A stretch of DNA of 55,003 nucleotides, counting the filler, from Sluysia triapertura (Eukaryota): the NCBI GenBank assembly GCA_046118255.1. It is 4 parts of 4 records of this genome, joined end to end, with 100 filler letters (N's around TTAATTAATTAA, not from the genome) between each part and the next. Parts side by side here need not be neighbours in the genome. Positions count along the whole stretch, not along the records: positions 25,097 to 38,851 come from JBJNIA010022290.1; 3 more parts are not named here. One strand, given 5' to 3'. The notes beneath the pieces were generated by a model. That model ran no database searches and was not told where the DNA came from. It saw only the letters and a program-made list of their open reading frames with translations. Of this stretch, positions 9,346 through 38,851 are shown one piece after another. Every line of letters begins with the position of its first letter. Position 1 is the first letter of the stretch. Made by a program: the position numbers and the translations under genes.

Positions 9346-9440
9346 TGTTGTGCGTGAGAACTCAACGATCCTAAACTTATACACTTGGGGCTAGTTCGTA
9401 AGTATCAACAAGAATAATCTGTGGAGGTTTAATTAATATG
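9346..9440. repeat. Short dispersed repeat (possible LTR end), copy 1; related to 25859-25955
   Basis: cgtgagaactcaacgatcctaaacttatacactt matches cgtgagtcccctacaatcttagacttattcactt at 26/34 positions. Both are followed by ttcgtaRgta and tggaggtt, and both start with TG. Confidence 0.55.
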
Positions 9441-10408
9441 ATAAAATGACTATTTAATTAATAACGTTTTGTATTTTTGCGTCGGAGTTTGCTACCGTGT
9501 AATTAAAAACACTGTCCTTACTAAATCGAATTTATTAATGATAAATTTAAGTCGAAATTTACAACCGTCTAATTATAAATGGCACTCCTTATTTAGCTTT
9601 TTAAATAATCATATTTAATAAATTTAACAATTTTTAAGTTTATTAATAATATAATAAAGGATTGATAATCGATTGAAGTAATAAAAAATAGATAGTACAA
9701 TAATTTAAGAAAGATGACTTTATAAATAAAAGAGAATGTATTAAATAATAAAAATTTATTATGATTAATATATAATCAAAGTAATGAATTTAATCGAACA
9801 GAACACTTTAAAAAGTCTTTCAAAAATCATTAAATAAATTTTATCTATATTTTAATATTATATATTATTATTATATTGTTATTATTAATAATTATCATTA
9901 AATATTATTCTTTATTATTATTATTAATTTCATTTTTTATTTAATTAATTATTAAATATTATTTAATAATACCTATTTAGAATAGGTTTGCCTAACAAAA
10001 TGTAAACGACAATAGAAAAAAATTCTTTGTTGTACGTGTAAGATATAATAACTGTTAAAACCGAATAATAATTATAGAAGTTTGTATATTTGTGTGTGTG
10101 TGTGTGTCAAGGATTATAAGATCATATATTTATATGACGTAATATGAACTTGAAAGTTAGTAAAACAATTTTTTAAAGCAAAATTTTACAAAAATCTATA
10201 TTTTTTGTGTACAAACATTTAAGCAAATATTAATTTATTTAATAAATTTTAAACAAATTATTAAACCTAATATTTGTTGATTATTCGTACTTGTGTGTTA
10301 TTATTAATTAAATATATTTACACAATAACATATTAACATACTAAATTTAGAAAGTATTTACACAAACTAATTTTAGAGTATTGATTGGCATTATTATACA
10401 TTATTTTC

Positions 10409-10463
<55 letters not shown>

Positions 10464-10725
10464 TATATATTATTTATTATTATTATTAAATGAGTAATAA
10501 TTTTATAATATAATTATTTTCCGCTTTGCGGAAATAGATTAATAATGATAGATAGTTATATAAATTTCGAGTATATAAAATCAAGTTGTGGAGCTGTGCT
10601 CATGCAAATATTTGGTCTTTCGATTGGTTTAGTGTTATTTTTTATTTCACGTGTTTAAAAGCAGTGGTAACATTGGAGGAGTGTAAAAAATTTTGTGCGA
10701 CAACTATCAATATTAAAAATAAAGG

Positions 10726-11695
10726 TTGTCTTTATTTAATTATTTTAGTACAACTATACTGATATCTTTGTTTATATTTGGTAAAGTATCTAAGCAACAA
10801 GTATATTTGAATAACGATGTGTTACTCGTATTGGTAGAGGAAAATGAACCGCATGAAGTTAATATATATTTTAGAAACGACTTATTGAGGTCACTTAAAA
10901 CCAATATGGGTTGGAATAACTATGACTTTGGTACAAAGTGAAAATGTAAACTGGGTTGCTTATAACAATTACAAAGTTGATCAAATTAATGAAGCGTTTC
11001 AAATAATAATAAAATTCGATTACATAAAAATAATTTTGTTTTTATCAAAACTAATGATGTATGGGTATATTGAAGGAAATTCGATATTTGTATATTTAAG
11101 AAATAACTGTTGGGGTAGTAGAGTATCATGTAACTGTGATAAAAAAAGTAGCAGTAGAAGTTGGCAAACTTAAAAATAATTAGATGCAATAGATTTATCT
11201 AATATTATTGTTTAGAAGGAGGGGCCGGTTGAAACAGATAGTAAAAGGGCAACTTTAAAAGGCACTCGAAACAGAGAAAAACTTCTAAGACAATGTCTCA
11301 AATACATGGTATTAAAAATTTCACGTGGTTAGATGGTGTTGTTAGTGATGATGTTACGGATATGCTTATATGTAAAATTCATGAATTAATAACTATGAGT
11401 AAACATGATCATATATGGGAATGGGCAGTATCACGCAAAGATGTGGAAATTTTATATTCAGCAAAAAATGCTGATGGAATAAGATGTAAAATTGTTCAAG
11501 TTTCATTAACTAAAACTAATTTCATTCTTCAACGTGGTGCTAGGCTTAGTTATGAAGATACATATGCAAATTATTATGTAGATAATAAAATATGCTAGTA
11601 CCTAATTATAATGATCCTAATGATGCAATTTCTAGCAAAATAATACAAGCACAATATCCTGGACGTGATGTCGTAGGTATAGACGTACGATATAT
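10726..11695 (+). pseudogene. Bacterial-type agmatine deiminase / Porphyromonas-type peptidyl-arginine deiminase (PAD_porph) pseudogene with signal-peptide-like N-terminus; 3' end runs into an assembly gap
   Basis: Colinear family motifs across frames: ENEPHE (10840-10857), IWVGITMTLVQSENV, KTNDVWV..GNSIFVY, LEGG..VETD, NFTWLDGVVSDDVTDM, DVEILYSAKNADG, YANYYVDNK, LVPNYNDPND and YPGRDVVGIDVR. Several frameshifts and stops. Confidence 0.88.
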
Positions 11696-11698
11696 ATA

Positions 11699-11798
11699 NN
11701 NNNNNNNNNNNNNNNNNNNNNNNNNNNNNNNNNNNNNNNNNNTTAATTAATTAANNNNNNNNNNNNNNNNNNNNNNNNNNNNNNNNNNNNNNNNNNNN
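11699..11798. other. Artificial scaffold join (44 N + TTAATTAATTAA + 44 N)
   Basis: 100-bp spacer containing a six-frame stop linker; the same motif recurs at 25041-25052 and 38896-38907. Confidence 0.95.
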
Positions 11799-12242
11799 AC
11801 TTTTAACCCACTGATGTAGAACATAGTTTCTGTGGGACCCATCGTCCCATTGGTAGTCAAATGATTAATAAACAATGAACAACATAGTATATATGCAATA
11901 AATTTATATATAGAAATTTTATTACACTAAATCTTAATATTATAGAAATTAGATGATAAATTACGTATTCTAACATTGTAAAATTTTTAAATTTTAATAT
12001 TTTATATATAAAAATTTTATCATCCAACGAATATTTAAAAAGGAATAAATCAAACAACGAAGCTCAATACGAAAATAAAATTCGACGAATGCAATATTAA
12101 CTACTGAAGAAGACTATTTTTAACTATCATTATAATCCATGGAGAACATCATAGTACAATTATTTTATTAAGGCAGACAATTTCCAGATATCATTTTCTT
12201 TTTTGTAAGTGATTGGTTATTTAATAATTTAACTGTATAAAT

Positions 12243-12838
12243 CAAGCGTGCGCAAACATTTTAAGTTACACCCCATTTCAACATATTTATTTTTGGCGTC
12301 CACTACTTCATAAATAAAATAAACACCTTTTCCATAACAAAATGTATTTTTCTGTTTCTTATAAATTAAATAAACACCAGTTCTAATTCTTTAGCAAAAT
12401 TAAATTTTAATTATTTATATCAAAAATGCAATATTAAGTCTGTTAATATTTCACTTCTATGAAATATTAATGTTTTTGTTATTTAATAGCTGCTATTTCG
12501 CGATTGTGATAGCAGTTTGCTAACGTTATTTTTAGTTAACAGCTAAAAAATAGTAGAATACCAAATAACATAACATCTCTAGTGCACATGTATAATTACC
12601 TTATGACTTTGTAAGTATATTTGTTTCGAAATTTTATTCTTGATGATTGTTCTACATCAAGAACGTAAACTATGGAATTAGATGATGGAATTACTTGAAT
12701 TGGTAAAAAACAACAAAAATCATTCAAAGAAAACACCAAACTTTGTTTGTAAAATCGAACAATTTTAAAATATTTAGCGCACCAAAATTATTATCACGTG
12801 CCCACCCGGGGGTTCGCCCCCTAGTTTTCGCGCCTTTG
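12243..12838. mobile_element. Degenerate hAT-like MITE
   Basis: Left end caagcgtgcgcaaac matches the reverse complement of the right end (caaaggcgcgaaaac) at 11/15 positions and resembles hAT CAGGGGTGCGCAAAC termini. Subterminal sequence is GC-rich. No 8-bp TSD is recognisable. Confidence 0.45.
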
Positions 12839-14837
12839 AGTTACACAACTACATATAAATGATAGGTTATTAAACAATTTGCAGCAGAAAATAATGAAAA
12901 ATGTAATAAGAAATTAAAGTCTTCTATTTCAGAAATATTACAATGAATGATCTATTCGAAGCGCAACGTAAATAAAATAATAATAATAGTATTATTATTA
13001 CTAAAATAATTATAATAATAATTATAATTTTAATAATAATAGTAGTAATAATAATGATAATAATGATAATAGTAATAATAATAGTAATAAATATAATGAT
13101 AATGATAATAATAGTAAATATAGTAATATATAATAAATGTAGTAATAATAATAATTGTAATGATAATTATAATTACTAATTATTATTACTAATATATAAT
13201 TATTAATGCATATAATTCATAAATTTAATGAGTGCAACATTGACAATAATTAAAATTAATATTAAATGAAAATAATTTTTATTTTTCAATTATTAATTAT
13301 ATAATCAGCAATAATTAATAATTGTTTAATTGATATTTTAATTTTAAATCAACTTTAATTAATTTTTAATATTTTTTAAATTATGTTTTCATTATAACAT
13401 ATTATTAATTTTAATAATTATTATTTTAATTATGAATGTTATAATTAAGACTCATTTTTATAATTATTTATAAATTATTTATAATCAAAATTATTTATAA
13501 AGAAAGATAATTGCTGAACGGTTTGTAACTAATGCCATCTTCTAATGATTTTGTAATTTAATTTTAAAATAATCTGACTGCTCTTATTACTTATTCTTTT
13601 CTACTTGTTGCTATGGATGTTAATATCGTGATACGAGCTGTAAAATTGTATTTTAAAGAGAATTTAAGTCTGTGTTTAAGTTCGGTTTTTCTTGAGGGCT
13701 TAATGTCATTAAAACCATCCAGTTTTAAACCTAAATTTGTTATGCTTCGAGTGTATTTGAGTGATGATTTTATTTCTTCAAATACTGTTTCTAAAACAAG
13801 TTCTAGTTTGACAGGATAATTCTTACACGCATAGGATATAGCATTTAACTTTTCGAGTTCTTTTTTAATTTTAATACTTGTATAATTTTAGTTTTCTTGG
13901 AGATTATACTAGATATTTTTAATTTAATAAGAGAATATAATGTCTTTAAATGTCTACTAAGGTTTCATTCAATTTTATCTATTATATTTAACGTTGATTT
14001 TATAAACATAGTACTATTACATTGAAATACAATTAACAAAAGGCTATAATGAAAATTTATTATATAATTAAAATTTCTAGTTGAACTGAATTGTAAGAAT
14101 GATTTGTTTACTAGCATCATCCAGGAGACTCCCACCTCGTGTTTGCGAGGAACCTTTCGTGCATGAAAGATGAAACATCAATATACAAAAATCCAACAAA
14201 TTCAAATCTCATTAAAAATCATGTCAACTCAATTTGGTGCTGTTTATTAGAAATAAGTAAAGAAGATATAGCATTACGAAATGAAATACTAAAAAATTAT
14301 ATAAAAATTAATGATACAATCAATGTTCTTAAAATGTCACAAGAACAACATGTAGGAAGTATTTGATCTGCGACAATTTTACTGTATAATTTTTAAATTT
14401 ACCAGTATGAAGAAAGATAAAAGTAGCTCATGTACACCAATTTGGTACATATTAGATGATGTATCGACTGTTAATTTTATTATTTTGTGTCGCTAATATA
14501 TATATATATATAATCTGTTTATTTATATATATATCTGTTTATTTATTAAATATTTATCCAAGATATAAACACGAAATACAAATTAATACTCATTCTAACC
14601 AATATAAAACACTCAATCAATCAGAATGATCTAATCAAAAAACAAACCAATTCATTAACACCAAATCCAAATTTAATGATACTCACCAGCGATTTTTCAA
14701 ATTACACGAGCGCGAGCAAACCAGTAAACTGGTATTCCGGGAGGTGGTGGGTTATTTATCGCGGACATTAATGCAAATTAATTTTGATTTTGATTAATAC
14801 TTCTCTTGATCTTAGTGCTCAATATTGTCAAGTTTCA

Positions 14838-15231
14838 TACCATACCAAAAGTTTCAGACACACATAAGACCAGATTTTTTAGTGTCAATGTACGCTCTTG
14901 ATCCACTTTTGTTAATATTTGATCTTTTATTTCGAGCTTAAGTTTAGATCTTCTGTCACTTCCACATTTTCCCGGTATTATAAAGCCTATTTGTAAATAT
15001 CTTTGCGCTGTTGTATTAATTGTTAGATATGGTTTATCACATATTAAACTGATTGACTTAGTAGAATATCCTTCAAGTGTTTTTCGAATTATTCTTTCTT
15101 TGTCATCATTGGCTGAAACAGTAATTTTTCATGTGCTTCATGTAATAATGTAATACTGTTGCTTTATGGATGGTAGCTTGATCGCTGTTTGTGTTTTCGC
15201 AGTTTACATTGTTGTTATGTGGAAATGACAT
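14838..15231 (-). mobile_element. IS630/Tc1-family transposase N-terminal (paired HTH) fragment, pseudogene
   Basis: Minus-strand translation NDDKERIIRKTLEGYSTKSISLICDKPYLTINTTAQRYLQIGFIIPGKCGSDRRSKLKLEIKDQILTKVDQERTLTLKNLV matches the HTH-linker(GGDRRSKL)-HTH pattern of IS630/Tc1 transposases. The DDE domain is absent. Confidence 0.75.
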
Positions 15232-17354
15232 GGATTGTCTAATTTTTAAATTTTTTAAACGATATTTTTATTTTTATTTGATTTATTAAATTTAAATTCT
15301 TTTCTCATAATTTATTTAATTGATTCCAGAGATTATTTGATTGATCGAAAACCCTATGCTATTATTATTAAATTATCTTTAATGGTTATATATCTCTTTA
15401 TCTCAATTTTTTCTTGCATAATCTTTACTTAGGTTTGGAATTGAAGCGTAAGTTAAAAATGTCAGATGAAAACTGTTAAAGGATGATCTGTATGGCAAAA
15501 CTATTCAATGCAACGTTATTTTAATAGATTCAAGAAAGGAATAGTTAAATGAATAATGTTGCTAGTTAATAGATTGTGTATTTGTAAGATACAGAGTGTA
15601 TGAAGAACTTTTTGATGAACTCTGAATGTGACTAAGATTGCTGAGTGTTTTGAGTTGGAGGATGTTTGAGTTTTACTATGGAGTTCTTTTGTATGTAGCA
15701 TTTATATTTTATGTATAATCTTGTATTTTTTTATGAATGGTGGATGCATTGAACAATGTAAATTATGGATAATGTGATAATAATAATAATAATAATAATA
15801 ATGATCTTGATGATAATGGAGATGGTTATATGATAATGATGATGATGAAGAAGAAATTTAAAATGATCTATAAATAATTTAAAGAAATGTTAAAATAAAA
15901 TAATGGCCATATAATTACAAATATATTGTTGGCTTTGGTTAATGCTGAAATAGACATAAGGGTTATAGCGTATAGTATAAGAATAAAATAAGTATTATTG
16001 AGGAAGTGTGCGAAACATTATAGCGAATTGCATTATTGGAATAAAATATTTAAAATATTTAAATAAAAATAAAAGCAAGAAAGAATCTTTTATAAGGTTT
16101 TACTTGTTAAAATATAAAAGTACATTTATTAATTAATTTAATTAAACATTGTTTAATTTAATAATTTCGTGAAACATGACTGCATATGAATAATAAAATT
16201 AATAATATTATAATTAAAATAATATAATTAATTATAATAATAATGATAATANNNNNNNNNNNNNNNNNNNNNNNNNNNNNNNNNNNNNNNNNNNNNNNNN
16301 NNNNNNNNNNNNNNNNNNNNNNNNNNNNNNNNNNNNNNNNNNNNNNNNNNNNNNNNNNNNNNNNNNNNNNNNNNNNNNNNNNNNNNNNNNNNNNNNNNNN
16401 NNNNNNNNNNNNNNNTTATTAAGTAATGATGTATTAATTTCTTTAAATAATATTTTAAATAATCTTTTTAATTGACAAATCTCAGTATAATGAAGCTTTC
16501 TGTTGCTTGTAATGGATTTTGCCACCACCATTATCATCTTATCATCGTAATCACAATCTACAATGGATTCGTCTTGAGAATATGCGAGATAAGTCAGTAA
16601 TTAATAAAATTATAATTGATTATACTACACTTTATTATCATAATAATTATTATCATCATCATTATTATTATTACTATTATTATTATTATCATTACCACTA
16701 TTGCTATTATTATTTTCTTCATTCACGCTATCTCAGAAAATTCTTTCTCCGCATCTCCAAATATCAAGTCTTTATTATTATTTGTTCCTTCAGTTAGAAA
16801 CTTCATAAAGTACCTTGAAACATTGCATCATTCAATTATAATTCAGTGAAACTGCAACATTTTCATACGTTACTCTCTGTTTTGTTCATTGTTGTCAGTA
16901 TAAGAATAATAATAATAGTAATAATAATAAGTGTATTCCCTCATTATTTACAACACTGTCTTATTTTGTGCTCGTAATCAATTGTTTCCCATAAGATCCA
17001 GTCTGTCACATATTAATAATGAGCAGATTAAATGGTTGTACTTCTTTTCAATATTAATAATAATGATAATATTAATAATAATAATAATGATAATTATAAT
17101 AATGTAATATAATATAATAATAGTAATAGTAATATTTAGTGAAATACATTTACCGTTAGCTTTTACGAAGGTCTTTTTATTTATATGATGTTTATTAAAA
17201 TTTTAAAGCACGAAATTCGACAAATTTTTATTTACTTGTTTTAAAATTTTAATAGTCAGCCTAACAAAATTGCAGGCTTTATTAATAAACAACAACAATA
17301 TAAGAATGACACAACGTTAGCACGAAACATGCATGTAACAAATAATAGATAACG

Positions 17355-25096: not shown

Positions 25097-25741
25097 TCTC
25101 AATAATAATATGAACCGTTTATATTTCTCAATTATGGAACCGCCCATTAAAGAATGTCAAATCACTGGAAAATTATGAAATATTTAAGTCAGAAGACAAT
25201 ATGTTTTTTCCATTTCACAATTATTATGGGGAATGACATATTTTAAAGTAATTTTAAATAATTATTTCACATTTGTTTAAATTAATATATAAAAATGAAT
25301 AAAAAAATATCATCATTAATTATTAAAATTACGTTTCAAACAAAATAGATTAAAATTATTATTGTGTATATTTTATTTAAAATTATTTTTAATATTAATG
25401 AAGTAAATTTTAACAAATGGCCATTAATTAAATCTATCATAAAAGTGTCATTTTTGCCGCGAATAATTGTTTTACAATTTAATTATTTTTAATAATATAA
25501 TATTAATTATTAATTTGTATATTGATTATTTTTTTGAAATTTATATTAATATTTCATAAATATAAATATTAATACTTAATATTAGGACTTAAATATACGA
25601 TGTGCACTTATTGATGTGCCTAATTGCTTTATCTGCTTCATCTAATGTGACGACCAAACTTCATTATAATATAACTCCATTAAAAATAACGAACAATCTA
25701 ATAAACATTTATTCATAAAACAAAAATATACTATAGTATTT

Positions 25742-25855
25742 AATTTTTGAAATTTTCCACTAATGTTTGATTCACTAAGCCTTCTTCACCCGAAATAACT
25801 TTTGAGCAGAAATTATGTCTGTTTTTGAAATATTCAAGCCATTCATTTGATAATA
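25742..25855 (-). mobile_element. pogo/Tigger transposase fragment (end of CENP-B-type HTH)
   Basis: LSNEWLEYFKNRHNFCSKVISGEEGLVNQTLVENFKN matches the pogo motif SxGWLxxFKxRH..SGE. Confidence 0.75.
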
Positions 25856-25858
25856 TAA

Positions 25859-25955
25859 TGAGAAACGTGAGTCCCCTACAATCTTAGACTTATTCACTTA
25901 ATGGATAATTCGTAGGTAGAAATAAATTTACTTATACTGGAGGTTAATTTATTAT
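25859..25955. repeat. Short dispersed repeat (possible LTR end), copy 2, abutting the pogo fragment
   Basis: Similar to 9346-9440. Confidence 0.55.
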
Positions 25956-26839
25956 CGCATATTTTCTGAAAGTCAATAGTTTATCATGCACTTAAGATAA
26001 CAACTTTTCTTAATAAAGAATCTTGGAGTTCAGATTTAGTATTGATTTTATGTCATAGTTTGAACACGATTCTTTAAGATTAAAAACTATTTTACTAGAT
26101 TTTAAATAAATAATTTTTACTGCTGACAACTTAAAAATCGGTTTTGTTATTAACTCTGAATTAAAAATGAATTTGTCGAATGTGTATAATTATCACAAAA
26201 ATCAATAGTAAAGTAATTGAACAATTATAAAAATATACAATTATAAATTTACAATACAATAAAATTTAGATATACAGTTTAATAAAATTAGTACAATGAA
26301 ATTTTATATGATTAATTTTTATTCTTTTTCAAAACGATTTTATTTTCTCAGATTATATTTAAAAATCTTTGGTAAAATAGGTGACACTGAAAAAATTTTA
26401 ACTAACGAAGATAATTTTTCCTTCTGACAGCAATTGTAAAATAACAATTCTTCGTAAAAATTTATATTTTGTAAACTGAACAAATCCAAAAGTAATTTTT
26501 CCTTTAAAAGCGTTTGTGAAATAACAATTCTCGTCAAAATATTTAAAAGTAGTTATTGTTACTGTATATATTTGTGTTTTGAGTGACTTCTCTATTGTTC
26601 TCTATTTATATAATATTTACATGGCCTTGATAAAACAATTGTTTTTTAAATTTTGAAATATTATTAAACTATTATAATATTTAAATTTATAGTAATATAT
26701 AGTAATAATAATAAGGATAATAATAATACTGTACAAGTTTTCTATTTTCTATATGAATAACATAATTATTATTATTATTAGTACCTAAATCAAAAGGTTA
26801 ATTAAAAATAAAAATTAAAACTAAAATCTGTTGTTCACA

Positions 26840-26920
26840 CTGGTTGCTGCCACCACCAACGATGACAGCCTATGTTCAATTCTCATTAGGCTGTCACCCT
26901 TGATGATGGTCAGCGATCAG
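26840..26920. other. Long GC-rich imperfect hairpin (81 nt)
   Basis: Perfect 10-bp inner stem TGACAGCCTA (26863-26872) / TAGGCTGTCA (26887-26896). Outer arms ctggttgctgccaccacca and tgatgatggtcagcgatcag pair with G-U wobbles, two mismatches and one bulge. Confidence 0.75.
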
Positions 26921-26961
26921 TCATAAGTTTTCATCATTCTTTACATGAATCAGTTTTATAA

Positions 26962-27097
26962 TATCCAATCAGAGCACAACATTAGAAAACAATTTACACT
27001 GATTTTTCAACACTCTGATTGGATACATGCAATTTCATCACGTCAAGAGTATTGCTATTTTTATCCTTCTCGTACTGTAACAATACGCCCAATCAGA
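26962..27097 (+). promoter_or_regulatory. Putative promoter of the SF3A3-derived ORF: three CCAATCAG (NF-Y-type) boxes and a CRE-like motif
   Basis: TATCCAATCAGAG (26962-26974), its exact inverse CTCTGATTGGATA (27013-27025), CCAATCAG at 27089 and TCACGTCA at about 27038, all 250-380 bp upstream of the ATG. Confidence 0.45.
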
Positions 27098-27342
27098 CTT
27101 AACTAATACTCAACAATTACAAACTCTGGCCAGCAACCAGCAAAAGCTAAAATAGAAAAATCATTTTAACACTACACAAAAATAATCGATTTTTTGGCAA
27201 TAGTCACAATTATTATCTTACTAAAAGTATAAAAAATTTAGTACTTCATTAGCATTCTGCTAAAGAGAAAAAAATTTTAGTTAATTTAAAAAGTAATTGA
27301 AAAAGCAAAAAAATTAACAAAAGTCAAAATTCAATTTATAAG

Positions 27343-29067
27343 ATGAGTATTCAAGAATGTAGAAAGTATCATAAACGTAATCCCGATGAGAGTATGTTGT
27401 TGTCGTTGGAGTATGATGAGTTTAAAAAAATACGCGAAAATGATGCTTATGAAGACAAGTTGTCTATACGTAAAAAAGATATAACTTATATGTCATCACC
27501 AAATGCATATACAGGATTTTATTCTCAATTGGCACAAATTAAAGAGCATCATAAATGTAATCCCGATGAAAGTATGTCATTATTATCTCTAGAATATGAT
27601 AGATTCGAAAAAATACGCGAATACGTTGAAGAAGCTGGTGCACCAGTTGTTGAATTTACTGATAAAGAAGGTTATCTTCGATTTTTAGATTTGCACGAAT
27701 GCTATCAAGTATATATTAATGTAAAAGTGCCGCATATCGATTATGTTACATACTTAACTAAATTTGATAAGTTATATGAATTTCCTAAGGATAAAAAGAA
27801 TGTTGCATGCTATAGTTATTTATTAAAGTTAACAGAATATTTAGATGATTTTACGACTCGTGCCAAACCGATGATGAAATTTGAAAATGTTGATCAAAGA
27901 AAACAAGCTGAAGAAAAGTTTAATAAAGAATGGGAAGATGGAAATTTTCGAGGATGGGTTCATGAACCAGAATGTGTTTACCAAATTTTAGATGATGTTA
28001 TTAATGAAGATTCTAGTTTATATCTATCAGAAAGTGTCTACCAGATTTTAGATGATGTTATTAATCAAGATTCAAATGATGTTATTAATGAAGATTTAAG
28101 TTTATATCTATCAGCAAGTGTTTACCAGATTTTGAGTGATGTTGCTCATGATGTTATTAATGATGAATCAATTAATGAAGAAGTGGAAGAAGACAATCAA
28201 GACCTCGAAGATAATTATCTTGGACAAGAGCAGTTTCTAGTCTGCAAATGTACTCGGACATCATGTCGCAGATCCGTCTCCAGTTCGATGAAGATACTGT
28301 GGAGTGATGCATTTGGAGTGGTTACGTACAGCAGATTTGAAGACTTTAAAAGTAATGAATTAATATTAAAGTTTATTTACGTTTATATTAACAATGATTA
28401 TTTTCATATTATCTATTTTAGAATATTTAGTCTATTCAAGAACGAAAATAGATCCAGGAACGAAGATATGCCGAAGCGTGTGAAATTACCAAATATATAT
28501 TTATTTTTAAATAGAATTAGGACTTTAATAAATAATTTCATTAAACATCTTGAATTTTGTTCTTTTTATAGTTTAAACAAATATGTTAAATTCAATAACA
28601 ATGAAAGACTGAACTCTGTTAAATCCGGTAACATTATAATCAGTAAAGACAATAATATAAACGAAAATGAAACTCGGAAAGATGTTAACTTACATAAAAG
28701 GCAAAAGCTTTATAAAACCACTCAAGAAATTAAACGTAGTGTTGATATAGAAAGGCCTAAATATGAAAATTACAAAGTTGTAGTTAAATTTTCACAACAC
28801 GAAATGTGTTTCAATAACGATTACATTATTATTCCAGATAATCTTACATCCTATAAGGTTCCAAACAACTTAATTCTCCTTCGGTCCAACATTAAAATAT
28901 CCAAATCATTAAATTTTATTTATAATATTAATAAGTCTAAAAATTGTCAATATATTCGTCTGTTCTGTAGAGTTAAGCCCTCAAAGACTTTTAATCGTAT
29001 TAATTTACAACCAAATTCATCCATACCCTCCATAATAAATGATTGTGATAAAATCCGTGTTCAATGA
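27343..29067 (+). CDS. Intronless chimeric ORF (574 aa): duplicated partial splicing factor 3A subunit 3 (SF3a60/Prp9) N-terminal region, acidic repeats and an unassigned C-terminus
   Basis: aa 36-208 align by eye to SF3A3 (YEDK..RK..MSSPN..FY..L.QIKEHH..PDE; VEFTDKEGYLRFLDLHECY..YIN; DYVTYL..FDKLYEFPKDKKN; EW..GNFRGW). aa 1-34 repeat the same PDE/LEYD helix. Three VYQIL..V..D repeats follow. The SF3A3 SAP domain and C-terminal zinc fingers are absent, so this is not the canonical gene. Confidence 0.8.
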   Translation: MSIQECRKYHKRNPDESMLLSLEYDEFKKIRENDAYEDKLSIRKKDITYMSSPNAYTGFYSQLAQIKEHHKCNPDESMSLLSLEYDRFEKIREYVEEAGAPVVEFTDKEGYLRFLDLHECYQVYINVKVPHIDYVTYLTKFDKLYEFPKDKKNVACYSYLLKLTEYLDDFTTRAKPMMKFENVDQRKQAEEKFNKEWEDGNFRGWVHEPECVYQILDDVINEDSSLYLSESVYQILDDVINQDSNDVINEDLSLYLSASVYQILSDVAHDVINDESINEEVEEDNQDLEDNYLGQEQFLVCKCTRTSCRRSVSSSMKILWSDAFGVVTYSRFEDFKSNELILKFIYVYINNDYFHIIYFRIFSLFKNENRSRNEDMPKRVKLPNIYLFLNRIRTLINNFIKHLEFCSFYSLNKYVKFNNNERLNSVKSGNIIISKDNNINENETRKDVNLHKRQKLYKTTQEIKRSVDIERPKYENYKVVVKFSQHEMCFNNDYIIIPDNLTSYKVPNNLILLRSNIKISKSLNFIYNINKSKNCQYIRLFCRVKPSKTFNRINLQPNSSIPSIINDCDKIRVQ

Positions 29068-32000
29068 ATAATTAATCAGTAACCAAATTTTATTATTCTT
29101 TTTAAGGTGAGGTGATAAGTAAATTTACTACTTTTTTAAATTGGATTTTAGAAAGTTATGATTTTATGAAATTAACGCATTATTTTATGCAGAGTTAATA
29201 AATTATAACTAACAAAATTTTCCAAATTACTGAATTAATATAATCAAGTATATCAATAAAAAACAAATTCGAAGGTTAAATATTTAAAGATAAAGATAAA
29301 GATTTATATTTATTTTAAATATAAAAAGTAAAAATATAGTTTAAGTAATATTTTAGTTTTTTAAGTGAACAAAACTTAGTCATGAATATGATTTTGTAAA
29401 TCGTTTTCAGCTGTTGGACAGATGTTACTCGATATTTCTTAAATTAATCGTCATGCACAAACTACAAACAACTTGTGTGTCATTATACATTATATTTACA
29501 ACAATTATGTGATTTATCGATTTATGTACGTTTATAAATAATTTTAATTGTGTGTGTTATTATATTTACATTAATTAGTATAATGTAAGTTATAAATTGT
29601 AAATTATTTTAATTGATTTTATTTATAAAGTAATTTTAATTCTGATTTTTAATTTTTATTTGAACTAACTTTAATATTTTAATCAAATTTAAATATTTTA
29701 AAGTCATTCTTGTTTTAAAAAATTAAAATAAATATTTTGTTTTAATCTGGCCAAGGCCAGTTGGATTAGCTATAAATACAACTATAAATTTTACAACTTT
29801 TTCACAAATTTTGTTTATCACGAGGTTAACTAATTCTTATAAATATTTCGTTGGAGCATACAAGAGCTAAATTTTTTAAAGATTAAGAAAAATTTTTACA
29901 AATGCATTTGAAAAGAAAATTGAATATAAAAATTTCACCGAAATTTTTTCTTTTCAATAAACAAAAAATACATTAGTTTATTATGTTAAGTTTTGGATAT
30001 AAAATATATCCTCGTAAAATATACTTGAAATAAATTTCTGTAATCACTTCTGAAAACTTATAATGGTTTTCTCGAAAAATCATTAATAAATTATTATTAT
30101 TTGAGAATTAAAATTAATTCTCCGTAATACACTTATTAATTTTTTAAATATTCTCAATTGTAACCTATTAATTTACTATATTAACCTTGACGATAGTAAT
30201 GAAATAATAGTAACGTGAGCACATCATCATCATGATTTGATCTCTGAAACTAATCTTAANNNNNNNNNNNNNNNNNNNNNNNNNNNNNNNNNNNNNNNNN
30301 NNNNNNNNNNNNNNNNNNNNNNNNNNNNNNNNNNNNNNNNNNNNNNNNNNNNNNNNNNNNNNNNNNNNNNNNNNNNNNNNNNNNNNNNNNNNNNNNNNAT
30401 TAAAAATTTATAAATTGATTGACAATTTATCGAGTGTTTTGAATATTAGTATTTTAGAAAAACTAAAGCAATAATTAATTAAATTAACAACTGCTATTTG
30501 GAAAAAGAGAAAAACAGTGTATAAACCACATGAAAATTAAAGTTCAAGTTGAAATTAAACTCAACTAAACTTATAACCTTTTCACCTCCAAGTTAAAACT
30601 ATGTTAGAATTATAAAATTAATTAATAAATTTGATTATCAAAAGCTCTTGATAGATAGACTTTTTAACTGAACGTATACCTTATTATTAGAGTAATATAT
30701 AAACTTGATATTACTTTAAAATCCCATAAATAAACCCTTAAGTATGGAAGCGTTAGATCACATCTTTAAACATTTTATGATAGTAGGCTTTTAATAGGAA
30801 CCTATCAATAATAATTAAAAATAATTATTATATTTTAAGGTTTGTCGTCATTACATTAATTTTATTGGATGTAACATCCATTAAAAAGAAGTTATCACTT
30901 TTTAAGTGCGAGAGATATGGTTTGTAAGTGTTTTTCTATGAAAACTAACTCGCTTAAACTTCTTAATTTACCTTATCATAAAAATTTACTAATAGTCTAC
31001 TAAAGCTTTTATGTTGCCTTACAAAATGATATCTGAAGGTAGGTCCGTGTATAGATATAGATTTACATTTCCTAAGAGGCGATGAATCTACAGAATTTTA
31101 TAAAATAAGTTGCTGGTAAAAATCGCTGCTAGTTTCGATATACATTATATTTCTTGCTTAAGAAATTAATTTGTAATTACGTCTTTTTTATGAAACAACA
31201 CATGAAAGAAACTAATGGATTATTACATAACGTAACACAATAAAACAGTTATAAACAATCGCAATGTGAAATACACCGAAATAAAATATAAGTAATAATT
31301 TATATAAATATTAAGATTTCTTTTAATATTGAATAGATGAATTTTAGTGAGATTTTGATGCTATCTTTAAAAGATTATATGTACGAAATTAATCTTTTAT
31401 TTAAAAAATGGAAAAACTTAATTGTAAAAATAATTAGAGTTGGATTCCACAGAGATCGAGTTTACCTCTTGTTAGAATTTTTTAGACAAATTATATTTAG
31501 AATTTCCGAAAACCCCAAACTGATTTAACGTTAAAAAATGTTATCAATCAGAGAGTTATATTTGAATTAACGAGAATGAATCGCGAAGCTTACTATGATT
31601 TACTCTTTTTGTTGATGTGCTTGTCTTGTAAAAATTCGACTGTATATATAATATTCGTAATTACGAAAATTAGCGAAATATTTATCATCAATTACCAAAA
31701 TAATTACTTTCAATTATTTTAACCGCAGCAAGGCAATTACCTTAATTTTCATTGATAAAATAGAACATTAAATAGTTATGTTTAACTATTTCAATAACTA
31801 CAATTCAATAGTTAAAATACAATTTTCTAAATAATTATAATTTTTAATATTTACAATTTTATTTTCATTGATTAAATAATTACTTACGGTTTCATTTAAA
31901 TTGCTTTTGTTATTACTCTCTGAAAGAAATATTCATTCTCTACTGAGTGCATAAAGATTTATATTTGCTTATAAATAATAATTGGTCAGATTTCAATGAA

Positions 32001-32451
32001 ACGTTGTATTATGGCATACTTGCGATTGATATACGTGCGGATTTGCAACGAATCACAAATTGGCATGTAGATCTATATTGTTTTCCAATAAATTATTCCA
32101 TTTTAGCTTCGTTAACTAAGAGATAAAATACTACTAAAAAATCTTAAATTTACAAATTATAATTTAAATATATTTCGATTGTAGTTTTCTTATATATTTT
32201 TGTCAGGACACAATTCTAAATTTTAAAATATAAATATAAACAATAATAATAATAATAATTAATCAGACTTACTTTACTTAACCTTAAATTTCTAAAAATA
32301 ACCAGTTTGCTGGATACATTCTTCTTCATTAATTGGTAATCTAAAAATATAAATAAATATTAAAAATATTAGTGATCATACCTTACAGATGATATAAATA
32401 GACCATTGAGGTCACAAGATAATCACAATTCATTGAAAAGTAAAAAGAGCT

Positions 32452-32592
32452 TACTTGGCAGATTTTGGCAGATTAATTGTAATTTGGTAACGAAATTCCG
32501 TCGGCGATAATTAGAATTTCTATGTGGCAGATTAGTTAACTTGGCAGATTAATTGTAATTTGGCAACGCGATTTTATCGGTGATAATTGGAG
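32452..32592 (+). repeat. Imperfect local tandem duplication (TTGGCAGATTAATTGTAATTTGG..CG..GATAATT)
   Basis: Two copies of about 50 bp starting at about 32464 and 32541, plus partial TGGCAGATT repeats. Confidence 0.8.
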
Positions 32593-34279
32593 CTATTGAG
32601 TAACCGATTTCCTGAGCGAATACAAAAATCTCATTTAAATTTATCATATGTTTTCCGCGGAAAAATCAGTAGGCTTTTTATGTTAAGGTTAATCTCTGTT
32701 AGGAGATAAAATATTACCACTTAAAATCTTAAAGTACACATTTAGTTTTCCACTAAACATAAAGTCATCTTTTAAAATATTGCATTATTGTTCTAATTAT
32801 TATTTCTAATTATAATAATAATTTATTTTACTATATTATTTTGTATAATTGGTATTTTTGGTTATATTTTTCTTTTAATATATTTATTAGTTTTCTAATG
32901 TCTTTTTGCTTGAATTAATTAATTTAAAGATATTAGTAAGTTGTATAATTGAAGAATAAAAAGACGTAGTTAAGAAGTAAATTTTTGTAAAGAGTATACA
33001 TTTGCCGCAATAATAAAGTTGAAGTTATAATATTTAAGTTGAGATGGTAAGAAGTTCTTAAGGGATCAGATTTGATAATAAATAAATAGAGTAAGTAATT
33101 AGACAAAGAAATATAAATTCATGTAGTTTTGAAGATAATCTTTTAGAAATTAAAGAAAAAAGTTTTCCTAGCATAGCATAAGATTTCTAAGTTATTTGTT
33201 CAAAAAGCATTTGAAAGTTCTCATGATTTTGTTATTTCCACGAGAAAGAAGAATATATCTTTTTCATATATTTTAAATATAAGGAAAGTTTTTTTTAGTT
33301 TGGTTTATAAGTCTACGAGTGCTGTAACTTACGAGTGCGTCTCCATAGGATTAAAGCATACATTGAAAGCGGACCTTTAGAATTAAATAATTAATTTGCA
33401 AACTACAAGAAAATACTAGCATTTTTATAAAGTTTACAATATCTTGGCAACATTACATTTTAGTATAAGTTGTCACAAGTTAATACAGTATTATTATTTT
33501 ATGAATAAGGTATAATAATTTTTCAAACATAATTTTGTTTAGTACTATTAATTTTGTAGTAGTAGATCTAAATTAAAGACTGTTAATACTACTACTGTTT
33601 TGTAATTACAGTAAAGATCAGGGTTAATATAAAATTTCTAAAGTAGATTGAGCTCAAATAAGATCAAACTCAATGGAACTATATATTAAATGTTTGAATA
33701 TTTAAAATACTGCTTCAACACTGAGATAATGATCCCCAAGTAAGAACGAACTTTATTTAATTCCACAAAATCACATAATAGATAGAATTTGCCTCCGTTT
33801 GACGATAACAATCTATCATTAACACTTAAAATTTTAATTCTACATGCACACATGAAAAATCACATTTCTTAACATTTAATATTTTACTTTTCCAGACTCA
33901 TCAAAATTTTAGAGCTTTATAACATTTTAAATACACAATTTCATAACATTAAAATTATACTTACATTGAAAACCAGTAAATGTACATTTCAAAGTTAATT
34001 TAAAATATCATAGGTTCACAATTCTTCAATATTTAAACCACTAATATCATTCAAAAACATTAAAATTATAATTCAAAGTTATTTCAAAACATTATTGTAA
34101 TCAAAATGGAATTTCTTTTAACATCTTTAACTACGTTGTTATATTACTTTTTTACTTCTGCATATATTCTTTCCAAAAGACAATATGAATTAAAGATATG
34201 TAAAAGAATTTTAAAAGAATTGTAGTCATGAAATAGTTTAAAAGAAAAGAAATATTGTTTAAAGAAAGAATTGTTCATG

Positions 34280-34331
34280 TTATTATTATTATTTATTTTG
34301 TTATCTTTATTATTATTATTATTAATATTAA

Positions 34332-34378
<47 letters not shown>
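34280..34378. repeat. (ATT)n microsatellite; similar tracts near 4875, 10410, 12975, 16640, 20800, 53003, 53735 and 54870
   Basis: Direct trinucleotide repeats; these generate the spurious poly-N/I/Y ORFs in the ORF track. Confidence 0.95.
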
Positions 34379-34379
<1 letters not shown>

Positions 34380-37300
34380 GCATTTTAACTTATTTCATGA
34401 TTATTTTAAATTTTTATTACTATTATTATTTGTGCTAATTGTCATTCTGTATCATTGGCATTTTATTTGCTGTTGCTGCCATTTTTGCCCTGTCAGTGAG
34501 GACAGTTTTTCGATTAGCATGGATTATTTACTGTCATCACTGACAGTCACAATTGATTATAATTTTTGTGAATTTAATAATGGATTTTATTGGCCATCCA
34601 GTCGTACTTTCAGTGATACATAAACTATTGATACAGAATATGTGTGTACACTGTGATTGTTGGAATTGATAATTTTGATTGGCTGTATCTATATTGATTT
34701 GGTTGTGAATTAAAAATTGTTATGATGTAAAAATTTTGAAAAATGAACATTTATTAAAAAGTTATACGAAGAACTTCATGTTGTCAGTTAAAGTTAAAAA
34801 TTAAAAAAGCAGACAGTTAATGAAAAATTTAAATTGTGATAACAATGCTCAAATTATTAAAAATGAATCGTAAAGATGAAAAGTCAATTCATTGTAATTA
34901 TAAAGGATTAGTATGTCATTTAAAAATAAATCCATCACAAAATTCATCTGAGATTAAACAATTAATAATAAAAAAGCAAAAGCGTGTTTCGATGATCAAT
35001 TTGAAATTTATGTCATATCTCCGTGTCGACATAAAACCCAAATAACATTTGGATTACTATTTTTAGTAGAAAATAGACCTAGTTCTGCATATTTGATTGA
35101 GCTTACATTGAAAAGTGATGATAATAGTGGCAATAAAAATTTTAATTGATATTTTAACCAATTTGACATTAAATACATGTCTTAACGTTCATTTGTATTT
35201 TATTCTTCATAAAGTTTTTAATGATAATAATTTAATCATAATTTTCATGAATATTAAAGATTTCTTTAGTGATAATGTTTTTAATGTTATTAAGAATTTT
35301 TACAATTTTAAATTTATCGTTAATGTGGAAATTCAATTTAACATAAATCCTAAATTTCAATATAAATTCATATAACATCTCCTATGGATGTTTTTGTCAA
35401 CCACCTAGAGGAATGCCTTCCAGTATGATGATATGTCATTTATTATAAGGAAACTCAACAAGTAAACTTTTATTTCGCAAAATAAAAATACTTGCAATTT
35501 AATTATTATTTTATTTAATGTTATTTTTAATATACTTTATTCTTGGACATTTTGGATTTTTAAAAAATTTCTTGTTTACACCTTTAAATCTAATTTGAAT
35601 TGTGACTTCGAAGCTTTCTGGTTATTTCATTTAACACAGTCGCTATTAACATTAATTGAGTTACAAAACAACAATGGAATCGAAATAACTTGAAGTGGTC
35701 ATTGTACTCAAAGTTTAATTTATGTTAAAGAAGAAGATTGTGATAGAAACATTTTTTCATTGATATTTTTGAGGGTTTCAAACGGTAATTTTAAATTTAC
35801 AAGATAAAACAATTGGTAATAACGCTTCTAATTGTTTTCATGGCTGTAAAACTGATCATTCGCATAAAAAGTGGTCCGTTGATGAATTACTAATTGTTAC
35901 TTATGCGCAACATTTATAAGTTACCAAGGAAGAAGATTTTCTTAATTATTTGAGAACATGTATTAGATATGCAGACAGAGAATATGATGTTTTCTTGGTC
36001 AGCTGAAGTTGTTTGGTCATGTTCACAACAGTATTAAAAGTCTTAGTCGGTTCTATTTTTAGATTGGACAAGTATTTGATTTCAACAAGAAAGGTAATAA
36101 ATATATGTAATTTAGAATTTTGAATTAACTATAATTGTTAAGCTGATTCACGTAAAGGCGATAAATTGTGTAAGTTTTATCAATCTTTGTTGCGCATTTG
36201 TTAATAAGAAATTCACCTTTATTCAAATAATAAATAGTAGGATTAATGTAAACATATATGGCGCTTATGATACTTATAATTCTCCCTTTGGTTAAAATTA
36301 ATTAAACTATTATTACTACTTAGCATTCAATTATTTATATCTGCATATATACTTCGAAATTATGTAGTAAAATTAAAGACGCGCAAAACAACACATAATG
36401 TTATTGGACATGAGATCATATAATCACTGTAAGAAAAGCATTACAAAAGTATTACTTCCAAGTATTCTTTCGAAATCTATTATAATTATAAATGTGCAAC
36501 ATCTTCAATGAAACACTTGATAAATATTTGTAATGATCTGTCCGAAAATCAGTTGTTACGATCACTATAATAATGATAGTTAATAAAAAGACATTAGTCT
36601 ACATTAGACATTATAGGATAAGTTTTATGATGTATTACTTATGTGTTCCATATCAGTGAAACTGTACAACCTACTGAAGAATCATATCACATTTTGAAGA
36701 ATCATATGACATGAGCGTCGATTGTTTTGATTTATTATCATCTAACTCGAGTATCCTTTTACAATACGTACAATTAAGATTTGGATTTTGCGCATTAGTG
36801 AAACTTATGTTATATTAAAGCCATGGTCACACTTTGGATTATATGATTTTCTGTACCAGTAATTACAGAATCATTAAGTAAGGCAGACGACTTTAGGATT
36901 AAGAGTAAGTCAAACACACTATGATGAGTATGAATAATAATAATGGGTCAATCAGTTTATCAGGAATTAAATTTAATTGCACTTTTAATGATACGATTAT
37001 ACAAAATCCTACCTTTTATTTTTTTGTATTATTCAATCCAAGCTATAAACTTACGGTTGAATTTTACTTTATACCACAAAACCGTAGACGCATTCTAGAG
37101 GCTTAGGAGTAGTATATTTCTTGTTTCAATAATCGGTCGGTGGCAGTGACATCACTATTCACATTAGCATTTTCCCATTGCTTTTTAAAATCTACGGATA
37201 TTAAGCATTACGGCTGGAGAATTTCACCAAATCTCAAGTTATCAAAATCGAAGTTGATGAATATCCCACCACTTTTGCTAAACTATTTCCTATTCCTCTT

Positions 37301-38851
37301 AGGGTCACTAAATCTTTTTTAAACCCTCTCTCTGCCACTGACGTTCAACATCTTGACGAGTGGTAAGAATGTTTAACTTACACACATTCTACATCTTCTT
37401 GTTTTTGATGTGCATAAGCTTCTTTTTGTAGCTTTTCATCATGTATATCATGATGTGAATCATGACCACCAAATTATCTAACTAGGATTTATGCACTAGC
37501 ATAAAAAATTTCACTCGATAGATATCATTCGACCATTGGTTAGAGTCCAAAACTTTTATAAGGAGATTCATGAACTCAATGATGAAAATCTGTCGTTAGC
37601 AAAAGACATTGATGATATAAGGAGCTACTGTCTAGCTCCTTACATGACAAGTTCTTGATATCCTTATATCCAGACCTCGTTATTTAAACTCTAGGTATCC
37701 CTTACGGTTGGTTGAGAGGAATAGTAAATCTCACCAACACGTATTTAGTTTTATTCTTCACAGCCGACCCATTTCTAAGGGCGACGCAGGTGATGAAACT
37801 TATATAACTATTCTTGCCTAAAATTACATGTTTTGACCTCATCTCTAATTCCATCACATTATTTGATCACTTGAGGGCCAAAGATCCGACCTTTTTACCG
37901 CAAAATCTACCTCCACCTCTTCAAATATCTTCTTTCCCTTTTCCTATCTGTTCTTCTCCTTCTTATACTAATCCTCCTTCCTCTCTTCTACCACACCTTC
38001 TCGATCGATTCGATTCAACCAGTCCCGAGCAACTTCTCCATGGTCATTCCACGTCTGCTAAGTTCATTGGTGACCAGTCCATACCACACCTACAAAATTT
38101 CATTCGCCAGGCGTCGACCTCGACGATTCAGATAATGATTGATACTTTCTACTGAAGACGAAGACATGGACATATTCAATTAACTTTTATAATAAGTGTG
38201 ATTATAATAATAATTTTCATGTGAACGACATTATATATGTCAACAAATGTATTTAATTTAAAAATAGAAACAAATATTGTATATTTAATTTAGAAAAATA
38301 GTTGTAAATCAATTTAGATTTATGTAAATTTAATAAAATTTATAAAATAAATAAATTTAAAATCTGTAACATAATTTTTATGGTATTATTATTATTAATG
38401 TTATTATTTTTATTATTTAAATATAGGTCAAGGTTATAAAAATTTTGTATTGTTGAACATTGAACTGTTAGATGTTGACTGAACATTGATTTATAAATTG
38501 TTGACTTTATCGAATTATGAATATAAATTGTTGACTTTATCGAATTATGAAATAGTTTTATTTATGAATTTTCGCGGATTAATTATTATCGAATTATGAA
38601 ATAATTTCATTTAATTTATGAATTTTTATGGATTATTTATAAAAGTATGATATTTTGAATTTTTATAGTTTATTTTTAATTTAATCATTTTTAATTTTAA
38701 TTATTTTTAATTTAATCACTTTTAATTTAATTAAAAAATTTTATTTATTTAAAAAATTTATTTATTATTTAAAAAATTTTAATTTAAAATTTTGATTTAA
38801 ATAATTTTTGTTTTAATCTGACCTCTCAAGGTCAGGTTAAAACATTATATA

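What the first reader, a model, noticed from the sequence alone, without database searches (positions are those of the whole stretch)
27343..29067. Intact chimeric gene built from a duplicated spliceosomal SF3A3 interaction module
Seen: the only long unbroken ORF in 55 kb of decayed sequence; it is intronless, keeps the SF3A3 N-terminal region with one helix duplicated, and stays open for about 366 further codons of unrelated AT-rich sequence. Known: this N-terminal part of SF3a60 contains the segment that binds the SF3a120 SURP2 domain, while the C-terminal zinc finger is needed for U2 snRNP incorporation. Inference: a young retro/chimeric gene or transposon-captured cargo that could act as an SF3a decoy or splicing modulator.
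Basis: partly seen in the sequence, partly recalled or inferred. Interest (0 to 1): 0.75.

Follow-up and report, generated by a model that had tools for sequence, protein, structure and literature searches.

The report
Multicopy truncated SF3A3 chimeric ORF
The long open reading frame is real and does carry an intron-less piece of the splicing factor SF3A3 fused to unrelated sequence, but it is one still-open copy of a family repeated many times in this genome, so it looks more like an amplified, repeat-borne gene fragment than a unique new gene.

Summary
The ORF at 27343..29067 (+), 574 aa, is the only long open frame in the 13.7-kb piece. Residues 33-208 match human SF3A3 residues 58-231 (E 7e-44), and residues 3-32 are a DNA-level duplicate of residues 61-93. 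Residues 209-~291 are acidic tandem repeats. Residues ~292-574 are open (P about 1e-11 by composition) but have no relative anywhere.

The ORF lacks SF3A3 residues 1-57 and the whole C-terminal half, including the zinc finger. No other SF3A3 exon lies in the piece. The ORF is uninterrupted where a canonical SF3A3 gene has introns.

The new result is that it is not a single gene. The only public run holding it gave 1610 distinct contigs at 90% identity or more on 3 kb. Summed depth was 5000-8000 over the SF3A3 part and 200-1900 over the tail, against 12.6 for the unique 3' flank unitig. Other copies carry different acidic linkers and rearranged joints.

Most likely this is a young, intact member of an amplified chimeric SF3A3-fragment family, either repeat cargo or an ampliconic gene family. 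Evidence for selection is weak (8 synonymous, 15 non-synonymous variants). No RNA data exist, so the SF3A1-decoy idea is untested.

The parts
27343..29067 (+). Intact 574-codon ORF (stop codon included). It is one copy of a multicopy family.
   Evidence: One search gives the ORF. One search shows it is the only long open frame. One search gives 1610 contigs at 90% identity or more on 26600-29600, with high summed depth confined roughly to the ORF.
27349..27438 (+). aa 3-32: a diverged duplicate of aa 61-93 (SF3A3 profile positions 89-119). It is the truncated first unit of a ~183-nt tandem duplication.
   Evidence: families D9 and D11, 71-87% DNA identity, spacing 180/183 nt; domain 1.
27439..27966 (+). 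aa 33-208: SF3A3 module homologous to human residues 58-231, uninterrupted by introns.
   Evidence: E 7e-44; E 1e-50; PF12108, PF16837. In locus L001 the matching pieces are separated by introns.
27478..27588 (+). aa 46-82: equivalent of the SF3A1-SURP2-binding region of SF3A3 (human residues 71-107).
   Evidence: One search aligns this segment to 2dt7_A and 5z56_w. The region is defined in PMC9514218. Binding itself is inferred, not tested.
27967..28215 (+). aa 209-291: acidic D/E/V/L/S-rich linker made of imperfect tandem repeats (84-nt and 24-72-nt units). It varies between family members.
   Evidence: D3, D4; composition. In one search, the loose ends at 27999, 28076 and 28159 give different sequences that stay open in this frame.
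28216..29064 (+). aa 292-574: orphan tail rich in N/I/K/S/R. It is open, has only a weak coding signature, uses codons differently from the N part, and has a lower copy number.
   Evidence: Searches cover openness, composition and periodicity. No relatives were found. Summed depth is 200-1900.
28352..28421 (+). Candidate 70-nt intron (GTAATG...TTTTAG). If it were spliced, the frame would shift and end at the TGA at 28481-28483, giving a protein of about 356 aa. This is speculative.
   Evidence: Read from the sequence. No RNA data are available. The joined model was not built or searched.
26802..27100 (.). Upstream high-copy repeat with two palindromes (26850-26909 and 26962-27025) and three CCAATCAG motifs. 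It is separated from the ORF by a low-copy spacer (27105-27306). It is either a separate repeat or a shared promoter module.
   Evidence: One search gives summed depth of 6800-17000 here against 98-178 in the spacer. One search gives palindromes I2 and I14.

Best explanation
This ORF is a young, still-open member of a high-copy family. The family arose from a processed (intron-less), doubly truncated copy of SF3A3 covering residues 58-231. That copy acquired an internal ~183-nt tandem duplication and was fused to an acidic repeat linker and an unrelated AT-rich tail. The chimeric unit was then amplified at the DNA level, by capture in an unidentified mobile element and/or by tandem and segmental duplication. 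The result is at least about a hundred distinct variants, and possibly several hundred copies of the SF3A3 part. Shown here: the homology, the truncations, the duplication, the openness of the frame, the lack of introns at positions where a canonical gene has them, and the multicopy state with structurally different paralogues. Inferred: the retro-origin, the mode of amplification, and the view that the intactness of this copy mainly reflects its youth. If translated, the product keeps the SF3A1-SURP2-binding helix but lacks everything needed to enter the U2 snRNP. The only mechanism it could plausibly have is competition with SF3A3 for SF3A1. That step is hypothesis only.
For: No further SF3A3 exons are in the piece. 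Canonical SF3A3 in L001-L004 is split by introns at positions equal to ORF aa ~94-97 and ~156-158, where the ORF is continuous. Multicopy state: 1610 contigs were laid, 159 at 99% or more, 520 at 95-99% and 931 at 90-95%. Summed depth is 3700-8100 over 27408-28013 and 200-1900 over 28216-29023. It is 29-84 beyond the stop, and the perfectly matching unique 505-nt unitig at 28983-29486 has depth 12.6. Exact unitigs inside the tail have depths of 20-120. Rearranged joints in other copies include 28105->27553 with 28 extra letters (depth 532), 28924->28394 and 28088->28346. The ORF is 40-45% identical to canonical SF3A3s, which are about 60% identical to each other, so the copy has evolved fast. 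This copy also carries private changes where the rest of the family keeps the canonical residue: K108 vs E, and C156 vs Y.
Against: No transposon hallmarks flank the ORF. There are no terminal inverted repeats, poly(A) tail or target-site duplication, and no transposase or reverse transcriptase is in the piece. High depth starts at about the ATG and ends about 80 nt before the stop. That pattern also fits a protein-coding family whose flanks have drifted below the 90% mapping threshold. Synonymous variants are somewhat enriched, at 8 of 23 against about 4.3 expected. All six listed alternative sequences from other copies stay open in the ORF frame (checked by hand). Summed contig depth is not a calibrated copy number, as the tool itself warns.
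Confidence: 0.55

Rival explanations
1. It belongs to a lineage-specific, massively expanded protein-coding gene family, possibly ampliconic on a sex-linked, germline-restricted or conflict-driven region. Its members are translated and act through the retained SF3A1-binding helix as decoys or modulators of SF3a assembly. The acidic linker and tail evolve rapidly.
For: The frame is open over 574 codons with P about 1e-11 or less for the tail alone. High-identity mapping is confined to the ORF rather than the flanks. The 8 synonymous to 15 non-synonymous variants give pN/pS of about 0.43, and within the SF3A3 part the ratio is 6 to 7. The alternative acidic linkers in other copies are all in frame and open. 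The SURP2-binding region is retained.
Against: The selection signal is not significant under realistic mutation bias (P = 0.05-0.2). The tail has almost no coding signature beyond the absence of stops (P = 0.026) and uses codons differently from the N part. Several joints in other copies are out of frame. This copy has private substitutions at conserved residues. No RNA run holds it. No homologous protein of this architecture exists in 1.8 billion representatives or in the word-indexed collection.
Confidence: 0.27
2. The real product is shorter than the ORF. A 70-nt intron at 28352-28421 (or others) is spliced out, so the N/I/K-rich tail is not translated and its openness is a leftover of its origin.
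For: The segment has GTAATG...TTTTAG boundaries and short-intron length. The tail has a flat GC profile across codon positions and weak periodicity.
Against: An open frame of 274 codons in 27% GC DNA is not expected by chance (2e-11). There is no RNA evidence either way. Such motifs are common in AT-rich DNA.
Confidence: 0.12
3. It is a unique young chimeric retrogene.
For: The structure is intact, intron-less and chimeric.
Against: Hundreds of diverged contigs from the same run cover the ORF at 90-99% identity.
Confidence: 0.03
4. It is an assembly chimera, with reads from several paralogues stitched into one artificial open frame.
For: High-copy families are prone to this. Only 58% of sampled 31-mers of 27000-29400 are present in the one holder run. 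No single contig spans the stretch.
Against: Perfect unitigs cover 28505-28640, 28792-28909 and the junction of the ORF end with the unique flank at 28983-29486. All 30 bins are covered. An artefact would not be expected to keep 574 codons open unless the source copies were open too.
Confidence: 0.05

Closest known systems
SF3A3 / SF3a60 / yeast Prp9 (U2 snRNP SF3a subunit)
   Same: aa 33-208 are homologous to residues 58-231 (E 7e-44). This span includes the SF3a60_bindingd and SF3A3 Pfam domains and the SURP2-binding region.
   Different: It lacks residues 1-57 and everything after residue 231, including SDE2_2C, the Prp9_C region and the zinc finger. It has a duplicated segment, acidic repeats and an orphan tail. 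It is intron-less, multicopy, and only 40-45% identical to canonical proteins.
Gene fragments captured and amplified by transposons (Pack-MULEs or Pack-TIRs, Helitron captures; e.g. PMC8277862 and PMC4224331, listed)
   Same: A partial host gene is fused to unrelated sequence and present in many diverged and rearranged copies, in a gene-poor, repeat-rich setting.
   Different: No terminal inverted repeats, Helitron ends or hairpin, or target-site duplications were found around the ORF. The captured part is intron-less, whereas DNA-level captures usually keep introns.
Amplified chimeric or retro-derived gene families (my own knowledge: Drosophila Sdic and Stellate/Su(Ste), mouse Slx/Sly; the primate ELOA3 retrogene array, PMC10664989, listed)
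   Same: A truncated derivative of a housekeeping gene is fused to other sequence and amplified to tens or hundreds of copies, some of them with open frames.
   Different: Neither chromosomal location nor expression is known here. A tandem arrangement is only hinted at, by a back-joint of about 580 nt in other copies. This piece holds a single copy in 13.7 kb.
Processed pseudogene or retrocopy
   Same: There are no introns at positions where a canonical SF3A3 gene has them.
   Different: There is no poly(A) tract and no 3' part of the parent mRNA. The amplified unit is the chimera, not the parent transcript.

Membership tests
Canonical SF3A3 orthologue | SURP2-binding region plus the SF3A3 domain (PF12108, PF16837) | tested here: met
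Canonical SF3A3 orthologue | N-terminal residues 1-57 are present | tested here: not met
   The alignment starts at human residue 58. The upstream in-frame codons are unrelated, and a TGA lies at 27298-27300.
Canonical SF3A3 orthologue | C-terminal half is present (PF13297 SDE2_2C, PF11931 Prp9_C, C2H2 zinc finger) | tested here: not met
   No Pfam or profile match lies in aa 209-574. tblastn with 37 long SF3A3 proteins (450 aa or more) finds no such exon anywhere in 25097-38851.
Canonical SF3A3 orthologue | Single or low copy number, with a multi-exon structure | tested here: not met
   One search shows many copies. Searches show that a canonical gene is split where this ORF is continuous. 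That comparator comes from an unknown eukaryote, not from this genome.
Processed retrocopy | Loss of the parental introns | tested here: inconclusive
   The ORF is continuous across two intron positions of the canonical gene in L001. The parent gene of this genome could not be fetched.
Processed retrocopy | 3' poly(A) tract and flanking target-site duplication | tested here: not met
   No A-run follows the ORF or lies at the 3' end of family homology (~28983-29070), and no flanking direct repeat was found.
Transposon-captured gene fragment (Pack-TIR or Helitron) | Many dispersed copies of the chimeric unit | tested here: met
   Whether the copies are dispersed or tandem is not resolved.
Transposon-captured gene fragment (Pack-TIR or Helitron) | Terminal inverted repeats or Helitron termini bounding the unit | tested here: not met
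   Searches find only short AT-rich chance pairs. The palindromes at 26850-26909 and 26962-27025 lie in a separate upstream repeat.
Functional SF3A1 decoy | The gene is expressed and its product binds SF3A1 SURP2 | not testable with these tools
   No RNA run holds it. The single-chain AF2 model is unusable, with mean pLDDT 32. No co-folding tool is available.
Protein-coding family under purifying selection | dN/dS clearly below 1 among paralogues | tested here: inconclusive
   The listed variants are 8 synonymous and 15 non-synonymous, giving pN/pS of about 0.43 and P = 0.05-0.2 depending on the assumed neutral fraction. Eleven further variants were not shown.

The most novel reading that the evidence does not exclude
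A lineage-specific family with hundreds of copies encodes truncated SF3A3 proteins that keep the SF3A1-SURP2-binding helix but cannot enter the U2 snRNP. These proteins would be expressed, for example in the germline or from a selfish element, and would titrate SF3A1 to modulate splicing. That would make this an amplified dominant-negative spliceosome component arising from genomic conflict.
Probability: 0.1. Interest if true: 0.8.

Novelty: new member of a known kind. Interest (0 to 1): 0.45.

Why it matters
Chimeric gene fragments amplified by repeats are common raw material for new genes, and most of them are inert. This one is unusual because the captured piece is the subunit-assembly module of a core spliceosome protein. 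The frame is still open in at least one copy, and the family is very large. If any copies are expressed, they would be a natural dominant-negative for SF3a assembly and a testable case of a selfish or ampliconic family interfering with splicing. If they are not expressed, the locus is an ordinary repeat and should be masked in annotation, so that it is not mistaken for SF3A3 or for a unique new gene.

Tried and rejected
- **Word-indexed protein searches.** Three searches (full ORF with region 1-215, aa 1-208 alone, aa 150-209 alone) found nothing.
- **Representative search.** The phmmer search of 1.8 billion representatives returned only canonical SF3A3 fragments, all within query aa 6-238. 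None hit the tail among the 150 listed hits, and all 131 hits at E of 1e-10 or better were listed.
- **Exact-product look-ups.** Look-ups of the ORF from three possible starts found nothing on record.
- **Related-locus scans.** Scans of metagenome and viral contigs found no relative.
- **Searches on the tail.** Pfam gave only a sub-threshold Orthopox_F8 hit (E 0.2-0.4), which I dismissed as chance. The PDB and the ESM Atlas gave nothing.
- **Structure prediction.** Single-sequence AlphaFold2 gave mean pLDDT 32, even over the SF3A3 part, so I ran no fold search.
- **RNA and regulatory scans.** Rfam and tRNA scans of the piece were empty. The bacterial promoter and terminator scan is irrelevant here.
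- **Other ORFs.** Pfam on ten other ORFs of the piece found no transposase or reverse transcriptase.
- **Cluster names.** The best hits named only vertebrate and springtail SF3A3, or had no name, so the host organism stays unidentified.
- **Literature.** Searches for expansions of the SF3A3 Pfam domains found no report of such a family.
- **Explanations rejected.** I rejected a canonical SF3A3 exon, a simple processed pseudogene of the full mRNA, a viral origin (the piece is nearly ORF-free), and a chance open frame.
- I did not build or search the joined (spliced) model around the candidate intron.

Full report
**The observation.** Only the piece 25097-38851 is genome. It is very AT-rich, at 16-40% GC in 500-nt windows, and holds an N gap at 30260-30398. 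The ORF 27343..29067 (+) is real: ATG start, 574 codons. The next longest stop-free stretch in any frame is 128 codons. From base composition, the chance of no stop is 4e-15 for codons 209-574 and 2e-11 for codons 301-574. The five other frames of the last 274 codons carry 14-48 stops each.

**The SF3A3 part.** Pfam finds SF3a60_bindingd (aa 50-75) and SF3A3 (aa 104-152), both above their curated cut-offs. Against solved structures, aa 33-207 align to human SF3A3 residues 58-231 (5z56_w, E 7e-44). aa 47-77 align to the SF3A3 peptide of 2dt7. A profile built from 31 full-length SF3A3 proteins matches ORF 34-208 to profile positions 60-233 (E 1e-50) and ORF 3-32 to positions 89-119. It matches nothing in aa 209-574.

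The duplication is visible at the DNA level. 27360-27397 vs 27540-27577 is 87% identical, and 27397-27445 vs 27580-27628 is 71% identical, 180/183 nt apart. The layout is a 5'-truncated first unit followed by a full unit of a ~183-nt tandem duplication covering about human residues 58-119.

According to PMC9514218, SF3A1 SURP2 binds a 17-residue amphipathic helix within SF3A3 residues 71-107, through hydrophobic contacts only. That region corresponds to ORF aa 46-82 and is present once. The duplicated piece repeats only the end of that helix and the following segment.

**What is missing.** SF3A3 residues 1-57 and everything after residue 231 are absent. tblastn with 37 long SF3A3 proteins (450 aa or more) finds no other SF3A3 exon anywhere in the piece. 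This is therefore not an exon of a canonical locus.

**Lack of introns.** A canonical SF3A3 gene recovered from JGI metagenome contigs (L001-L004, an unknown eukaryote at 40% GC) is split into many exons. Its pieces matching ORF aa 50-93, 98-155 and 159-209 are separated by introns of about 550 and 140 nt. The ORF is continuous across both positions, which points to a processed (cDNA) origin. The parental gene of this genome could not be fetched, so this step is inferred.

**Rate of evolution.** Over the shared region the ORF is 40-45% identical to canonical SF3A3s. Aardvark and springtail SF3A3 are 60% identical to each other over the same region. The copy has therefore evolved fast.

**The rest of the ORF.** aa 209-291 are acidic imperfect tandem repeats (families D3 and D4). 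aa 292-574 are rich in N/I/K/S/R, with 0% Ala and 1% Gly.
- GC is flat over the three codon positions (0.28/0.27/0.27), against 0.44/0.26/0.21 in the SF3A3 part.
- The tail uses many more C-ending codons than the SF3A3 part.
- Its codon periodicity is only slightly stronger than what the absence of stops alone would give (P = 0.026).
- It has no relative in Pfam, the PDB, the ESM Atlas or the listed hits of the 1.8-billion-protein search.

The tail is therefore of separate origin and weakly constrained at best, but its openness is not chance.

A 70-nt segment at 28352-28421 has intron-like ends. If it were spliced, the frame would end at 28481-28483. I did not build or search the joined model, and there are no RNA data to test it.

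**The decisive new result: many copies.** Only one public run holds the stretch (X1), with no RNA on record. Laying its contigs on 26600-29600 placed 1610 contigs: 159 at 99% identity or more, 520 at 95-99% and 931 at 90-95%. The depth figures are:

| Region | Summed depth |
|---|---|
| 27408-28013 (SF3A3 part) | 3700-8100 |
| 28014-28215 (acidic linker) | about 2100-2200 |
| 28216-29023 (tail) | 200-1900 |
| Just beyond the stop | 29-84 |
| 27105-27306 (5' spacer) | 98-178 |
| Unique 505-nt unitig, 28983-29486 (perfect match, single contig) | 12.6 |

The tool warns that summed depth is not a copy number. Even so, that many distinct diverged contigs on 3 kb can only come from many paralogous copies. 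My estimate is on the order of a hundred or more distinct variants, and possibly several hundred copies of the SF3A3 part, with tens of copies of the tail.

Other copies differ in structure:
- The loose ends at 27999, 28076 and 28159 give other acidic linkers.
- A back-joint 28105->27553 with 28 extra letters (depth 532) suggests tandem units of about 580 nt elsewhere, which would be out of frame.
- The joints 28924->28394 and 28088->28346 indicate further rearrangements.

Placed in the ORF frame by hand, all six listed loose ends are free of stops.

**Selection.** Of the 23 listed single-letter variants inside the ORF, 8 are synonymous and 15 are not, against a neutral site ratio of 1 to 4.35. 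This gives pN/pS of about 0.43. P is 0.05 with the Nei-Gojobori expectation and 0.2-0.4 if mutation bias raises the neutral synonymous share to 25-30%. That is suggestive only.

In this copy K108 and C156 are private changes, where the rest of the family keeps the canonical E and Y. At L112 other copies carry V, R or, in one contig, the canonical G. Because near-identical unitigs exist (depths 20-120), this copy is probably young. Its intact frame is therefore weak evidence for function.

**What it is not.**
- No TIRs, poly(A) tail or target-site duplication bound the unit.
- No transposase or reverse transcriptase is nearby.
- No RNA families or tRNAs are in the piece.
- The upstream segment 26802-27100 is itself a very high-copy repeat with two palindromes and three CCAATCAG motifs. 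A low-copy spacer separates it from the ORF, so I cannot say whether it is a separate element or a shared promoter.

**Conclusion.** The locus is, however, one intact member of a large amplified family rather than a unique young gene.
- Most likely (0.55) it is repeat-borne or otherwise amplified cargo with no established host function.
- A real expanded coding family with a decoy role remains possible (about 0.27).
- The decoy mechanism would be binding SF3A1 through the retained helix without the parts needed to enter the U2 snRNP. It is the only mechanism the sequence suggests, and nothing here tests it.
- No report of an SF3A3-fragment expansion was found.
- No protein of this architecture was found in any collection searched.

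Noticed in passing
window 26802-27100: A very high-copy repeat (summed contig depth 6800-17000) lies just upstream of the ORF. It has a 23-nt-arm palindrome (26850-26872 / 26887-26909), a perfect 13-nt inverted pair (26962-26974 / 27013-27025) and three CCAATCAG motifs. It could be a MITE- or SINE-like element or a shared promoter module.
   Followed up: partly
window 26701-26801 and 34280-34430: These are ATT/TAA trinucleotide microsatellites. The first gives the highest summed depth of the laid stretch (about 80,000). The second produces spurious poly-Ile and poly-Asn ORFs on both strands.
   Followed up: no
window 37100-38170: This is the only GC-richer segment of the piece (35-40% GC). It holds a 113-aa Pro/Ser-rich ORF (37814-38155, +) with no Pfam match. 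It may be a remnant of another repeat or gene.
   Followed up: partly
window 38492-38551 and 38670-38808: There is a perfect 30-nt tandem duplication, followed by arrays of 15-31-nt AT-rich minisatellite units at the end of the piece.
   Followed up: no
window 30260-30398: This is an assembly gap of 139 N. It was left untouched.
   Followed up: no
L001:3230-8036 (also L002-L004): JGI metagenome contigs from four samples carry a complete multi-exon canonical SF3A3 gene of an unidentified eukaryote (40% GC). I used it only as an intron-position comparator.
   Followed up: partly
window 28216-28417: This is a locally GC-richer island inside the ORF (aa ~292-358). Its 28317-28417 part has a higher summed depth (1875) than its neighbours (690-810), which suggests a separate repeated fragment embedded in the tail.
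   Followed up: no
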